A stretch of 64,000 nt of DNA from Octopus sinensis (taxonomy: Eukaryota), in contig NC_043018.1 of the NCBI RefSeq assembly GCF_006345805.1, positions 28,148,001 through 28,212,000 of the forward strand. The letters run 5' to 3'. The notes beneath the pieces were generated by a model. It did no database searches, was not told where the DNA came from, and worked only from the letters and a program-made list of their open reading frames with translations. Both the position numbers and the translations under genes were made by a program. Within the stretch, counting starts at the first letter, position 1; each line of letters starts with the position of its first letter. Of this stretch, positions 42,264 through 52,569 are shown piece by piece.

Positions 42264-45200
42264 CATCACAATCAAGGAACGGCCATAATAGGCCATTCAC
42301 CCACTAGAAATAACAGCCAAAAGCTTTAACCGCAAAATAACATCAATTCCGTAAACCAGGAGAAAATTAAAAACATTTACCCTGTAATTCTTATACGATG
42401 CACCGTTTCATCTACTGTTTAATGGTAAACTAACCTGATTAAATTAAATCGAGCCAATCTACCATAGGCCCTTAGATTCATCAGTAAGAAATAGCCAAGT
42501 CGGAACAGATATTTTTCACGAGGCATTCCCGTCCCTGCCTCGGCAATATCTGACATAAAATTTTCAAATCATCGCACACTCGCCCAAATTTATCGGCAGC
42601 AAATAAATATAAGCCGCCGATTCCATTACGGAATTAACCAGAAAATTCATAATTAATCAATATAGGGTGGCAAAAAATTTGTAGAATTTTTTTGCCACCA
42701 GCGGCCTAGTGGGAAAAAATTAAATAGTCATATACCATTTTTAAGTTCAACATCACAATCAAGGAACGGCCATAATAGGCCATTCACCCACTAGAAATAA
42801 CAGCCAAAAGCTTTAACCGCAAACTAACATCAATTCCGTAAACCAGGAGAAAATTAAAAAACATTTACCCTGTAATTTCTTATACGATGCACCGTTTCAT
42901 CTACTGTTTAATGGTAAACTAACCTGATTAAATTAAATCAAGCCAATCTACCATAGGCCCTTAGATTCATCAGTAAGAAATAGCCAAGTCGGAACAGATA
43001 TTTTTCACGAGGCATTCCCGTCCCTGCTCGGCAATATCTGACCTAAAATTTTCAAATCATCGCACTCGCGCCAAATTTATCGGCAGCAAATAAATATAAG
43101 CCGCCGATTCCATTACGGAATTAACCAGAAAATTCATAATAATCAATATAGGGTGGCAAAAAATTTTGTAGAATTTTTTTGCCACCAGCGGCCTAGTGGG
43201 AAAAAATTAAATAGTCATATACCATTTTTAAGTTCAACATCACAATCAAGGAACGGCCATAATAGGCCATTCACCCACTAGAAATAACAGCCAAAAGCTT
43301 TAACCGCAAAATAACATCAATTCCGTAAATAGGAGAAAATTAAAAGACATTTACCCTGTAATTTCTTACACGATGCACCGTTTCATCTACTGTTTAATGG
43401 TAAACTAACCTGATTAAATTAAATCAAGCCAATCTACATAGGCCCTTAGATTCACCAGTAAGAAATAGCCAAGTCGGAACAGATATTTTTCACGAGGCAT
43501 TCCGTCCCTGCCTCGGCAATATCTGACCTAAAATTTTCAAATCATCGCACTCGCGCCAAATTTATCGGCAGCAAATAAATATAAGCCGCCGATTCCATTA
43601 CGGAATTAACCAGAAAATTCATAATTAATCAATATAGGGTGCCCAAAAATTTTGTAGAATTTTTTTGCCACCAGCGGCTAGTGGGACAAAATTAATAGTC
43701 ATATACCATTTTTAAGTTCAACATCACAATCAAGGAACGGCCATAATAGGCCATTCACCCACTAGAAATAACAGCCAAAAGCTTTAACCGCAAACTAACA
43801 TCAATTCCGTAAACCAGGAGAAAATTAAAAAACATTTACCCTGTAATTTCTTATACGATGCACCGTTTCATCTACTGTTTAATGGTAAACTACCTGATTA
43901 AATTAAATCAAGCCAATCTACCATAGGCCCTTAGATCATCAGTAAGAAATAGCCAGTCGGAACAGATATTTTTCACGAGGCCATTCCCGTCCCTGCGCTC
44001 GGCAATATTTGACATAAAATTTTCAAATCATCGCACTCGCGCCAAATTTATCGGCAGCAAATAAATTAAGCCGCCGATTCCATTACGGAATTAACCAGAA
44101 AATTCATAATTAATCAATAGGGGGGCAAAAAATTTTGTAGATTTTTTGCCACCAGGGCCTAGTGGGAAAAAATTAATAGTCATATACCATTTTTAAGTTC
44201 AACATCACAATCAAGGAACGGCCATAATAGGCCATTCACCCACTAGAAATAACAGCCAAAAGCTTACCGCAAAATAACATCAATTCCGTAAACCAGGAGA
44301 AAATTAAAAGACATTTACCCTGTAATTTCTTACGATGCACCGTTTCATCTACTGTTTAATGGTAAACTAACCTGATTATTAAATCAAGCCAATCTACCAT
44401 AGGCCCTAGATTCATCAGTAAGAAATAGCCAAGTCGGAAAGAGATTTTTCACGAGGCATTCCCGTCCCTGCCTCGGCAATATCTGACCTAAAATTTTCAA
44501 ATCATCGCACTCGCGCCAAATTTATCGGCAGCAAATAAATATAAGCCGCCGATTCCATTACGGAATTAACCAGAAAATTCATAATTAATCAATATAGGGT
44601 GCCAAAAAATTTTTTAGAATTTTTTTGCCACCAGCGGCCTAGTGGGAAAAAGTTAAATAGTCATATACCATTTTTAAGTTCAACATCACAATCAAGGAAC
44701 GGCCATAATAGGCCATTCACCCACTAGAAATAACAGCCAAAAGCTTTAACCGCAAAATAACATCAATTCCGTAAACCAGGAGAAAATTAAAAAACATCTA
44801 CCCTGTAATTTCTTATACGATGCACCGTTTCATCTACTGTTTAATGGTAACTAACCTGATTAAATTAAATCAAGCCAATTTACCATAGGCCCTTAGATTC
44901 ATCAGTAAGAAATAGCCAAGTCGGAAAAGATATTTTTCCCGAGGCATTCCTCGTCCTGCCTCGGCAATATCTGACCTAAAATTTTCAAATCATCGCACTC
45001 GCGCCAAATTTATCGCAGCAAATAAATATAAGCCGCCGATCCATTACGGAATTAACCAGAAAATTCATAATTAATCAATTAGGGTGGCAAAAAATTTTGT
45101 AGAATTTTTTTGCCACCAGCGGCCTAGTGGGAAAAAATTAAATAGTCATATACCATTTTTAGTTCAAATCACAATCAAGGAACGGCCATAATAGGCCATT

Positions 45201-52000: not shown

Positions 52001-52569
52001 ATGACTATTTAATTTTTTCCCACTAGGCCGCTGGTGGCAAAAAATTCTACAAAATTTTTTGCCACCCTATATTGATTAATTATGAATTTTCTGGTTAATT
52101 CCGTAATGGAATCGGCGGCTTATATTTATTTGCTGCCGATAAATTTGGCGCGAGTGCGATGATTTGAAAATTTTATGTCAGATATTGCCGAGGCAGGGAC
52201 GGGAATGCCTCGTGAAAAATATCTGTTCCGACTTGGCTATTTCTTACTGATGAATCTAAGGGCCTATGGTAGATTGGCTTGATTTAATTTAATCAGGTTA
52301 GTTTACCATTAAACAGTAGATGAAACGGTGCATCGTATAAGAAATTACAGGGTAAATGTTTTAAAATTTTCTCCTGGTTTACGGAATTGATGTTATTTTG
52401 CGGTTAAAGCTTTTGGCTGTTATTTCTAGTGGGTGAATGGCCTATTATGGCCGTTCCTTGATTGTGATGTTGAACTTAAAAATGGTATATGACTATTTAA
52501 TTTTTTCCCACTAGGCCGCTGGTGGCAAAACAATTCTACAAAATTTTTTGCCACCTTATATTGATTAAT
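49081..52569 (+). repeat. Right arm of the array: 7 units plus a stub, with hammerheads on the plus strand
   Basis: Hammerhead motifs at 49311-49417, 49800-49906, 50288-50394, 50775-50880, 51263-51369, 51752-51858 and 52239-52345; all have intact cores. Confidence 0.96.
50288..50394 (+). ncRNA. Type I hammerhead ribozyme (representative plus-strand copy)
   Basis: Stem I ATTTCTTA (50288-95) pairs with TAAGAAAT (50387-94). Core CTGATGA is 50296-302. Stem II is closed by ATCTA/TAGAT (50303-50370), followed by GAAA (50371-74). Helix III is ACGGTGCATCGT; the GUA triplet predicts cleavage 3' of A50386. Confidence 0.93.

What the first reader, a model, noticed from the sequence alone, without database searches (positions are those of the whole stretch)
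42264..52569. Ribozyme satellite: 21 tandem type I hammerheads at ~489-nt spacing (candidate cephalopod retrozyme / circular RNA system)
Seen in sequence: every unit has AUUUCUUA-CUGAUGA-[stem II]-GAAAC...GUA-UAAGAAAU with a perfect 8-bp stem I and all conserved core positions (e.g. 50288-50394). Established knowledge: tandem repeats with one type I hammerhead per monomer (newt satellite 2, Dolichopoda pDo500, Schistosoma SM-alpha, metazoan non-LTR retrozymes) are transcribed as multimers and self-cleave to monomers, which in retrozymes accumulate as circles. Inference: this locus yields ~489-nt non-coding monomers or circles starting UAAGAAAUUACAGGG and spreads through a retroelement RT. I do not know of this family being described in cephalopods, but I could not search.
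Basis: partly seen in the sequence, partly recalled or inferred. Interest (0 to 1): 0.95.

Follow-up and report, generated by a model that had tools for sequence, protein, structure and literature searches.

The report
Inverted arrays of hammerhead-ribozyme repeats
A 10.3-kb block of a 489-bp non-coding repeat, each unit carrying a complete self-cleaving hammerhead ribozyme motif, lies as two head-to-head arrays inside a (TA)n microsatellite. It looks like a new, probably octopod, member of the already known "retrozyme" class of ribozyme-bearing mobile repeats, not a new kind of system.

Summary
The repeat and the ribozyme motif are real, but the description needs correcting. The locus is not 21 same-strand units. 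It is 14 units on the minus strand (42264-49082) joined head-to-head, with a 2-nt overlap, to 7 units on the plus strand (49081-52569). Seventeen of the 21 hammerheads are intact and four are damaged. The motif has all core nucleotides: an 8-bp helix I, helix III of 4 bp with a palindromic UGCA loop, and cleavage predicted after GUA. It is atypical in having a 68-nt helix II and an A10.1-U11.1 pair, and Rfam 15 does not detect it even at E<=10. A full descriptor found none elsewhere in the window and none in 20 Mb of composition-matched random sequence. The 489-nt monomer is AT-rich (36% GC), non-coding and strongly structured (z = -6.5). These are the hallmarks of metazoan non-LTR retrozymes and hammerhead satellites. 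Both outer (3') ends abut one (TA)n tract and the 5' ends meet in the middle, the pattern described for Penelope-like elements and twin-primed reverse transcription. Shared monomer subtypes also show DNA-level amplification or a heterogeneous template. Transcription, cleavage, circles, copy number and host species could not be tested. No cephalopod retrozyme was found in the searchable literature.

The parts
42264..49082 (-). Left arm: 14 hammerhead units. In monomer coordinates it runs 121-489, then 13 full monomers, then 1-132. Its 5' end is at 49082 and its 3' end at 42264.
   Evidence: TRF: period 488, 14.0 copies, 96% matches, 2% indels. blastn of the consensus. Motifs on the minus strand.
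49081..52569 (+). Right arm: 7 hammerhead units. In monomer coordinates it runs 162-489, then 6 full monomers, then 1-232. All 7 ribozymes are intact.
   Evidence: TRF: period 489, 7.1 copies, 98% matches, 0% indels. blastn. Descriptor 7/7.
49081..49082 (.). Head-to-head junction of the two 5' ends. There is a 2-nt AA/TT overlap and no (TA)n between the arms.
   Evidence: Sequence, blastn coordinates, inverted-repeat pairs I1-I3.
50288..50394 (+). Representative intact type I hammerhead: AUUUCUUA / CUGAUGA / 68-nt helix II / GAAA / C-GGUGCAUC-G / UA | UAAGAAAU. Predicted cut after 50386.
   Evidence: Sequence, per-unit table, folding.
43361..43467 (-). Damaged ribozyme: core CUGGUGA (A6->G) and GUG at the cleavage site.
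48223..48328 (-). Damaged ribozyme: A at 10.1 lost and the base of helix II disrupted.
43846..43950 (-). Damaged ribozyme: A at 10.1 lost, leaving U-U at the base of helix II.
44323..44426 (-). Damaged ribozyme: the 3' strand of helix I lacks its first UA, so helix I cannot form in register.
42074..42263 (.). Left half of the (TA)n target microsatellite. It directly abuts the 3' end of the left arm.
   Evidence: TRF, sequence.
52570..52653 (.). Right half of the (TA)n target microsatellite. It directly abuts the 3' end of the right arm.
   Evidence: TRF, sequence.
41440..42073 (+). Context only: a decayed, internally deleted mariner-like relic that ends with its 3' terminal inverted repeat (CAGGAAATATTCAGCAACCCTC) at the microsatellite.
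   Evidence: Sequence and translation. HTH_48 at E = 1.1e-4, below Pfam's cut-off.
52685..52850 (+). Context only: a second mariner-like relic. It starts with a 5' terminal-repeat-like GAGAGAGTGCTGAAAATTTCCTGG, followed by the transposase C-terminus GLEKLMDRCNKCVNLRGEVKKYHNP.
   Evidence: Sequence, blastn of the flanks, translation. Read by eye; no Pfam hit.

Best explanation
The locus is a genomic copy of a non-autonomous, non-coding hammerhead-ribozyme repeat of the metazoan 'non-LTR retrozyme' / hammerhead-satellite kind, in what is probably an octopod genome.

Proposed mechanism (shown in the sequence):
- Each 489-nt unit carries one type I hammerhead.
- Helix III alone is weak, but the segment ACGGUGCAUCGU is quasi-palindromic. 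Two neighbouring ribozymes can therefore pair into a 12-bp extended helix III.

Proposed mechanism (inferred by analogy):
- Transcripts running outward from the central junction through either arm would fold one hammerhead per unit and cut after GUA. This would release 489-nt monomers starting UAAGAAAUUACAGGG, with 5'-OH and 2',3'-cyclic phosphate ends.
- Cleavage would favour multimers (double-hammerhead mode). The monomers would be circularised by an RtcB-type ligase or by the ribozyme itself.

How the DNA copy arose (inferred):
- RNA was reverse-transcribed at a nicked (TA)n microsatellite.
- Two primings occurred on opposite target strands, as in twin priming or the inverted 5'-truncated copies of Penelope-like elements. 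This gives two arms whose 3' ends face outward and whose 5' ends are joined by a 2-nt microhomology.
- Unit number then changed through unequal crossover, or the template was already a heterogeneous multimer.

The confidence given applies to the identity of the locus as a hammerhead-bearing repeat of the retrozyme kind. I put self-cleavage at about 0.7, circular RNA at about 0.55, and Penelope-like or twin-primed integration at about 0.4.
For: Ribozyme:
- All invariant core positions (CUGAUGA, GAAA, U16.1, H17 = A) plus three helices are present in 17 of 21 units.
- There were no descriptor hits elsewhere in the window or in 20 Mb of random sequence.
- The active three-way junction lies 1.9 kcal/mol above the MFE, and it is the MFE once the core is kept unpaired.
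- Helix III alone is -0.2 kcal/mol; the 12-bp helix III dimer is -19.5 kcal/mol. A palindromic loop 3 is the published hallmark of metazoan type I hammerheads (PMC4209133).

Retrozyme hallmarks:
- Tandem units with 36% GC, and a longest stop-free stretch of 60 codons.
- The monomer RNA folds at -148 kcal/mol with z = -6.5. It uses 24 G-U pairs on the ribozyme strand against 3 on the complement.
- Published retrozymes have the same features, including mussel units of 350-390 bp whose hammerheads lack the archetypal loop contacts.

Insertion:
- Both outer ends abut (TA)n and there is none at the inner junction.
- Perfect (AT)n of at least 10 units covers only 2.9% of the rest of the window.
- Penelope-like elements prefer (TA)n and form tandem plus inverted copies (PMC8557442). 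Their hammerheads are also found as close pairs on opposite strands.
- The left arm's 3' end (monomer position 132) and the right arm's 5' end (position 162) are 29 nt apart, as twin priming predicts.
- The arms are not mirror copies, and the flanks differ beyond the mariner terminal repeats.
Against: - There is no hammerhead hit in Rfam 15 even at E<=10.
- The pair at 10.1-11.1 is A-U, whereas G-C is described as highly conserved. Helix II is 68 nt against the usual ~4 bp plus a loop, so the helix I / helix II tertiary contacts cannot be recognised.
- The MFE prefers an alternative UGAUG:CAUCG pairing that competes with the core.
- There is no evidence of transcription or circles.
- Only one locus was seen, and no relatives were found in the collections that could be searched.
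- Variants are no rarer inside the ribozyme than outside it: about 26% against 22% of columns, by my own count from the listing.
- Monomer subtypes are shared between the arms, and the left arm has a 5-unit higher-order pattern. Neither fits copying of a single monomeric circle.
- A 10.3-kb uncut template conflicts with efficient cleavage.
- The 132/162 adjacency has roughly a 1-in-8 chance of arising at random.
- No Penelope-like ORF is present in the window.
Confidence: 0.7

Rival explanations
1. This is ordinary satellite DNA that happens to carry a hammerhead. The array arose and grew only by DNA-level processes (replication slippage, unequal crossover, an inversion). The ribozyme at most trims satellite transcripts, as first proposed for newt satellite 2, and there is no reverse-transcription cycle.
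For: The left arm has a 5-unit higher-order pattern and monomer subtypes are shared between the arms, both signatures of unequal exchange. Only one locus was seen. No reverse transcriptase of the Penelope type is nearby. The 2026 preprint itself invokes local amplification by unequal crossover.
Against: A simple inversion with one break in the flank should carry (TA)n to the inner junction, and none is there. A fold-back duplication should give mirror-image arms, and they are not mirror images. The position inside a (TA)n tract, with both 3' ends outward, is what endonuclease-primed reverse transcription gives.
Confidence: 0.2
2. The motif is a dead or never-active hammerhead look-alike. The atypical A10.1-U11.1 pair, the very long helix II and the competing pairing prevent cleavage, so the locus is just a decaying repeat.
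For: Rfam does not recognise it. G10.1-C11.1 is described as highly conserved. The MFE uses an alternative pairing. No purifying selection is visible within the locus.
Against: Every invariant core base is present and the three helices are in register in 17 of 21 units. Such a motif was never produced in 20 Mb of random sequence. Mussel retrozyme hammerheads also lack the archetypal contacts yet cleave, and an axolotl family tolerates a U-U at the base of helix II. Young copies are not expected to show selection.
Confidence: 0.12
3. The head-to-head arrangement is an assembly artefact (a chimeric or palindromic long read, or a misjoin inside a repeat). The real locus is a single one-orientation array.
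For: The left arm carries many 1-nt indels, largely in homopolymer runs, which is typical of unpolished long reads. Tandem repeats are prone to misassembly.
Against: The arms have different lengths (14 against 7 units), different variants and different unique flanks, so the structure is not a palindromic read artefact. The junction has no gap and shows a clean 2-nt overlap.
Confidence: 0.1
4. This is an integrated or co-assembled viroid-like or delta-like circular RNA replicon rather than a genomic repeat.
For: The unit is small, structured and carries a hammerhead. Hammerheads do occur in delta-like agents of metazoans (PMC7936874, listed).
Against: The array is embedded in ordinary genomic DNA, between microsatellites and transposon relics. 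There is no ribozyme on the complementary strand. There is no ORF of antigen size. No match was found in viral contigs.
Confidence: 0.02

Closest known systems
Metazoan non-LTR retrozymes (Cervera & de la Pena 2020, PMC7229834): coral, mussel, axolotl
   Same: One type I hammerhead per unit, tandem arrays from dimers to tens of units, low GC, no ORF/LTR/PBS/PPT, and a strongly self-paired monomer. The mollusc example (mussel, 350-390 bp) also lacks the archetypal loop 1 / loop 2 nucleotides.
   Different: The unit is 489 nt, above the published range (170-400 nt RNAs; 150-450 bp repeats). Helix II is 68 nt instead of about 4 bp plus a loop. The 10.1-11.1 pair is A-U. Rfam does not detect it. 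Expression and circles are untested. The host is probably a cephalopod, which was not reported.
Newt/salamander satellite 2 and other hammerhead satellites (Schistosoma SM-alpha, Dolichopoda pDo500)
   Same: A tandem satellite-like repeat of a few hundred bp with a type I hammerhead. A palindromic loop on helix III allows double-hammerhead cleavage of multimers.
   Different: Here helix III has 3 bp beyond A15.1-U16.1, which is more stable than the 1-bp amphibian form, so single-motif cleavage is conceivable. Peripheral helices and sequence are unrelated.
Penelope-like elements (PLEs) and their pseudo-LTR hammerheads (PMC4209133, PMC8557442; bioRxiv 10.64898/2026.07.22.740005)
   Same: Insertion in (TA)n microsatellites, tandem plus inverted head-to-head copies, and hammerheads found in pairs on opposite strands. 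Retrozymes are proposed to derive from PLE pseudo-LTRs.
   Different: No RT/GIY-YIG ORF is present here. PLE hammerheads are minimal (no helix III, an extra base before 10.1), whereas this one has a full helix III. No similarity to any PLE could be tested.
Twin priming of LINE-1 (established knowledge, Ostertag & Kazazian 2001)
   Same: Two segments are joined 5'-to-5' with microhomology. Both 3' ends lie at the target. The 3' end of the inverted part and the 5' end of the direct part are neighbours in the template (132 against 162).
   Different: There is no poly(A) and no recognisable target-site duplication (which could not be seen inside a microsatellite anyway). The template is a repeat, so the adjacency holds only modulo 489.
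Plant LTR retrozymes and viroid-like circular RNAs
   Same: Hammerhead-processed small structured RNAs that can circularise.
   Different: Those carry type III hammerheads and have LTR/PBS/PPT (retrozymes) or ribozymes in both polarities without a DNA stage (viroid-like). None of this is seen here.

Membership tests
Hammerhead ribozyme, type I | Invariant core C3 U4 G5 A6 N7 G8 A9 / G12 A13 A14 / A15.1-U16.1 / H17 (not G) | tested here: met
   CUGAUGA ... GAAA ... GUA in 20 of 21 units. One unit has CUGGUGA and GUG.
Hammerhead ribozyme, type I | Three helices in register, with helix I open and helices II and III closed | tested here: met
   Helix I is 8 bp. Helix II is 5 bp, then an internal loop, then a 19-bp hairpin. 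Helix III is 4 bp with a UGCA loop. This holds in 17 of 21 units.
Hammerhead ribozyme, type I | G10.1-C11.1 pair, as is typical of canonical hammerheads | tested here: not met
   The pair is A10.1-U11.1 in all units that keep it. G-C is described as highly conserved in PMC4209133.
Hammerhead ribozyme, type I | Loop 1 / loop 2 tertiary contacts | tested here: inconclusive
   Internal loops exist 8 bp up helix I and 5 bp up helix II, but the archetypal nucleotides are not recognisable. The same is reported for mussel retrozymes.
Hammerhead ribozyme, type I | Match to the Rfam hammerhead covariance models | tested here: not met
   There was no hit at gathering score or at E<=10 on either strand. 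I attribute this to the 68-nt helix II, but that was not tested directly.
Hammerhead ribozyme, type I | Site-specific self-cleavage | not testable with these tools
   This needs in vitro transcription.
Metazoan non-LTR retrozyme | Type I hammerhead in each unit of a tandem repeat of a few hundred bp | tested here: met
   The right arm has 7 of 7 intact and the left arm 10 of 14. At 489 bp the unit is slightly above the published 150-450 bp. By the preprint's 'active' definition (hammerhead in all repeats), only the right arm qualifies.
Metazoan non-LTR retrozyme | Low GC (below 45-50%) and no coding capacity | tested here: met
   GC is 36.4%. The longest stop-free stretch is 60 codons, and no ORF of 120 aa or more lies in the array. 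LTR, PBS and PPT were not searched for explicitly.
Metazoan non-LTR retrozyme | Monomer predicted to be a highly self-paired RNA | tested here: met
   MFE -148.4 kcal/mol, z = -6.5, with 0 of 100 shuffles as stable. 60% of bases are paired when it is folded as a circle.
Metazoan non-LTR retrozyme | Abundant linear and circular monomer RNA in tissues | not testable with these tools
   No transcriptome was accessible.
Metazoan non-LTR retrozyme | Many dispersed loci in the genome (mobility) | not testable with these tools
   There is one locus in the 64-kb window. No eukaryotic genome collection was available, and the scans that could be run found nothing.
Metazoan non-LTR retrozyme | Co-occurrence with Penelope-like elements in the genome | not tested
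   None is present in the window. The literature reports Penelope-type and Naiad elements in cephalopods.
Penelope-like element | ORF with a telomerase-like RT and a GIY-YIG endonuclease between pseudo-LTRs | tested here: not met
   The array has no ORF. The only reverse transcriptases in the window are LINE-type, with APE endonuclease.
Viroid-like / delta-like circular RNA agent | Ribozymes in both polarities, or an antigen ORF, and no genomic DNA copy | tested here: not met
   The complementary strand has no ribozyme. There is no suitable ORF. The array is embedded in genomic DNA.

The most novel reading that the evidence does not exclude
The locus preserves the footprint of how a non-LTR retrozyme integrates. 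One long multimeric retrozyme RNA of about 10.3 kb (21 units, position 121 to position 232) would have been reverse-transcribed at a nicked (TA)n tract from two primers on opposite target strands, presumably by a Penelope-like RT/GIY-YIG enzyme. The first cDNA would have stopped 29 nt short of the second priming site. If that is right, retrozymes can spread as uncut multimers rather than only as monomeric circles. The unusual hammerhead (68-nt helix II, A10.1-U11.1, dimer-prone helix III) may then be tuned to cleave slowly or conditionally.
Probability: 0.25. Interest if true: 0.65.

Novelty: new member of a known kind. Interest (0 to 1): 0.4.

Why it matters
If confirmed, it would add cephalopods to the animals that carry hammerhead retrozymes. 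It would also show that a family with a very long helix II escapes the standard Rfam models, so current counts (for example the 235 'hammerhead 1' hits reported for the giant squid) may understate these elements.

The architecture is one concrete, checkable piece of evidence for the recent proposal that animal retrozymes depend on Penelope-like elements: a (TA)n target, 3' ends outward, and 5' ends joined by microhomology. On its own it is a single locus of a known class, and it does not open a new question.

Tried and rejected
1. Rfam at gathering score and at E<=10 found no hammerhead. The sub-threshold miRNA 'hits' are the hairpin formed by the inverted junction and the (TA)n tracts.
2. The metagenome scan with the core plus the 3' half gave one hit, L003. 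It is a GC-rich bacterial-looking contig that shares only the 16-mer, so it is a chance match. The viral-contig scan found none.
3. I used the longest stop-free peptide of the unit (60 aa, antisense) as a handle to pull satellite-bearing contigs out of the protein-indexed assemblies. No candidate was found.
4. Exact look-ups of three window ORFs, to find the source record and organism, were not on record. The two closest RT hits lead to an unnamed metagenome scaffold and an assembly I could not name.
5. The ~30-nt inverted similarity of the flanks first suggested an inverted duplication of the whole locus. I rejected this because it stops after about 30 nt, is only ~80% identical, and is explained by the terminal repeats of two mariner-like relics.
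6. Fold-back or mirror duplication is rejected because the arms do not share variants unit for unit.
7. Simple inversion is rejected because there is no (TA)n at the inner junction.
8. The hit at 40599-40614 that resembles the 3' half of the ribozyme is chance.
9. One literature search with a loose term threshold returned only general cephalopod papers.
10. One paper (PMC5785218) is not held.
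Full report
OBSERVATION

Tandem Repeats Finder reports two adjoining arrays:
- 42264-49082: period 488, 14.0 copies, 96% matches, 2% indels.
- 49081-52569: period 489, 7.1 copies, 98% matches, no indels.

Their consensus units are reverse complements of each other. 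The strict pattern CTGATGA-N50-80-GAAAC-N6-12-GTA occurs 20 times against 0.03 expected, 13 times on the minus strand in the left block and 7 times on the plus strand in the right block. A fuzzy search for the cleavage-site anchor finds 21 sites, 14 minus and 7 plus. The quoted example, 50288-50394, is exactly as described.

THE UNIT

Nineteen full monomers, cut at the predicted cleavage site, give a 489-nt consensus of 36.4% GC. Plus-strand copies differ from it by 0-7 substitutions and 0-3 deleted bases. Minus-strand copies differ by up to 14 substitutions, 14 deleted and 12 inserted bases, and many of these are single bases in homopolymer runs. That may reflect either age or long-read error.

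The array contains no ORF of 120 aa or more. The longest stop-free stretch on the circular consensus is 60 codons, on the antisense strand.

The monomer RNA folds at -148.4 kcal/mol (z = -6.5; none of 100 shuffles is as stable), while the complement gives -106.8 kcal/mol (z = -5.25). The ribozyme-strand fold uses 24 G-U pairs and the complement uses 3, as expected if the structure matters at the RNA level on that strand.

THE RIBOZYME

The motif reads:

AUUUCUUA / CUGAUGA / helix II (68 nt) / GAAA / C-GG-UGCA-UC-G / UA | UAAGAAAU

- All invariant core positions are present and H17 is A.
- Helix I is a perfect 8 bp and continues beyond an internal loop.
- Helix II is 5 bp (AUCUA:UAGAU), then an internal loop, then a 19-bp hairpin.
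- Helix III is A-U, C-G, G-C, G-U, capped by the palindromic tetraloop UGCA.

The active three-way junction lies 1.9 kcal/mol above the MFE, which instead pairs UGAUG of the core with CAUCG. With the core held unpaired, the hammerhead junction is the MFE. Helix III alone is worth only -0.2 kcal/mol. Two copies of ACGGUGCAUCGU pair over 12 bp at -19.5 kcal/mol, so double-hammerhead cleavage of multimers is plausible. A short helix III with a palindromic loop is described as typical of metazoan type I hammerheads (PMC4209133; PMC7229834).

A descriptor requiring the core plus helices I (at least 5 bp), II (at least 4 bp) and III (at least 3 bp) matches 17 of 21 units. It matches nothing else in the window, and nothing in 2 x 10 Mb of first-order Markov sequence with the composition of the array or of the window.

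The four failures are as follows:
- Unit cut at 43369: A6->G and GUG at the cleavage site.
- Units cut at 48231 and 43854: loss of the A at 10.1.
- Unit cut at 44331: the 3' strand of helix I has lost UA.

Three features are atypical:
- The 10.1-11.1 pair is A-U, where G-C is called highly conserved.
- Helix II is far longer than the canonical ~4 bp.
- The archetypal loop-loop nucleotides are not recognisable.

Rfam 15 gives no hammerhead hit at gathering score or at E<=10. I attribute this to the long helix II but could not test it.

ARCHITECTURE

In monomer coordinates, with 1 as the first base after the cut:
- The left arm runs 121-489, 13 full units, then 1-132.
- The right arm runs 162-489, 6 full units, then 1-232.

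The two 5' ends meet at 49081/49082 with a 2-nt AA/TT overlap and nothing between them. The two 3' ends directly abut (TA)n at 42263 and 52570, so the block splits one microsatellite. Perfect (AT)n of at least 10 units covers only 2.9% of the rest of the window.

Beyond the microsatellite the flanks share about 30 nt of inverted similarity. This is explained by two decayed mariner-like relics in the same orientation:
- The left one ends with its 3' terminal repeat at 42073.
- The right one begins with a 5' terminal-repeat-like sequence at about 52685, followed by a transposase C-terminus.

The mariner assignment rests on reading the translations and on sub-threshold HTH_48 matches.

ORIGIN OF THE ARRANGEMENT

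The arms are not mirror images. Variants near the junction are not shared unit for unit, the arm lengths differ, and the unique flanks differ. This argues against a fold-back duplication or a palindromic-read artefact. A simple inversion with one break in the flank should have carried (TA)n to the inner junction, and none is there.

The geometry has 3' ends outward at the target and 5' ends joined by microhomology. The left arm's 3' end (132) lies 29 nt from the right arm's 5' end (162). This is what twin-primed target-site reverse transcription predicts (established knowledge for LINE-1). It also matches what is described for Penelope-like elements: a (TA)n preference, tandem plus inverted 5'-truncated copies (PMC8557442), and hammerhead pairs on opposite strands. 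The 132/162 adjacency alone has about a 1-in-8 chance of arising at random, so it is only compatible evidence.

Against copying of a single monomeric circle, monomer subtypes recur. In the left arm M1~M6, M2~M7~M12, M4~M9 and M5~M10, a 5-unit higher-order pattern. Subtypes are also shared between the arms: P1 and P4 with M4 and M9, and P6 with M2, M7, M10 and M13. Either the template was a heterogeneous multimer or the arrays were later reshaped by unequal crossover and gene conversion, as the 2026 preprint also proposes.

CONTEXT AND ORGANISM

The window holds two LINE-like elements with APE endonuclease and RVT_1 domains, several mariner relics, and no Penelope-like ORF. The closest named relative of the LINE reverse transcriptase is from the octopod Argonauta hians, at 57% identity. 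Closer unnamed hits could not be assigned to a species, and the window's own ORFs are not on record. A cephalopod, probably octopod, origin is therefore plausible but not shown.

COMPARISON WITH WHAT IS KNOWN

Metazoan non-LTR retrozymes are tandem repeats with one type I hammerhead per unit. They are low in GC and non-coding, and they are expressed as abundant, highly self-paired circular RNAs of about 170-400 nt in a coral, a mussel and the axolotl. They are said to be present in many invertebrate phyla (PMC7229834). A 2026 preprint argues that they derive from Penelope-like pseudo-LTRs.

The present family meets every sequence-level criterion, with three differences: a larger unit, a much longer helix II, and the A-U pair at 10.1-11.1.

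In the searchable literature no cephalopod retrozyme is described. The retrozyme papers and the one supplement held do not mention cephalopods. The giant-squid genome paper only counts 235 Rfam 'hammerhead 1' hits. Combined searches found nothing relevant. Subscription journals are not covered.

VERDICT

This is a real hammerhead-bearing repeat and a new member of a known kind. The mechanism is inferred by analogy and is untested. The most interesting aspect is the insertion footprint, which fits Penelope-like or twin-primed integration into (TA)n. It rests on a single locus.

Noticed in passing
window 7182-11093 (-) and 61629-63827 (+): Two LINE-like retrotransposon copies with APE-type endonuclease and RVT_1 domains. 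The first also has a zinc-finger ORF1-like part. Its nearest named RT is from Argonauta hians (57%).
   Followed up: partly
window 37231-37784: Three tandem copies of a 185-bp unit (90% matches). By eye it resembles a tRNA-derived SINE, but ARAGORN finds no tRNA in the window.
   Followed up: no
window 25855-25916: A short interstitial telomere-like (CCCTAA)n tract.
   Followed up: no
window 34879-35097 (-), 56732-56962 (-), 41440-42073 (+), 52685-52850 (+): Four decayed mariner-like relics, with sub-threshold HTH_48 matches or a readable transposase C-terminus. Two of them bracket the microsatellite that holds the array, and their terminal repeats explain the inverted similarity of the flanks.
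   Followed up: partly
window 48994-49130, 42075-42204, 52592-52670: Sub-threshold Rfam microRNA-precursor matches. They come from the hairpin formed by the head-to-head junction and from the (TA)n tracts, not from microRNA genes.
   Followed up: yes
window 40599-40614: AGAAACGGTGCATGTA resembles the 3' half of the ribozyme, but no core or helices lie nearby. It is a chance match next to an (AC)n/(AT)n tract.
   Followed up: yes
window 42264-49082: The left arm shows a 5-unit higher-order periodicity of monomer subtypes. It also has many single-base homopolymer indels that are absent from the right arm; these could be real divergence or unpolished long-read error.
   Followed up: partly
monomer positions 121-162 (e.g. 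window 50507-50548): Three of the four array end points (left 5' at 121, left 3' at 132, right 5' at 162) fall within 42 nt of the unit. This could be a priming or termination hot spot, a transcription start, or coincidence.
   Followed up: no
whole window: There is a very high density of (TA)n, (AC)n, (TAA)n and similar microsatellites (97 TRF rows). No recognisable host gene was found.
   Followed up: no
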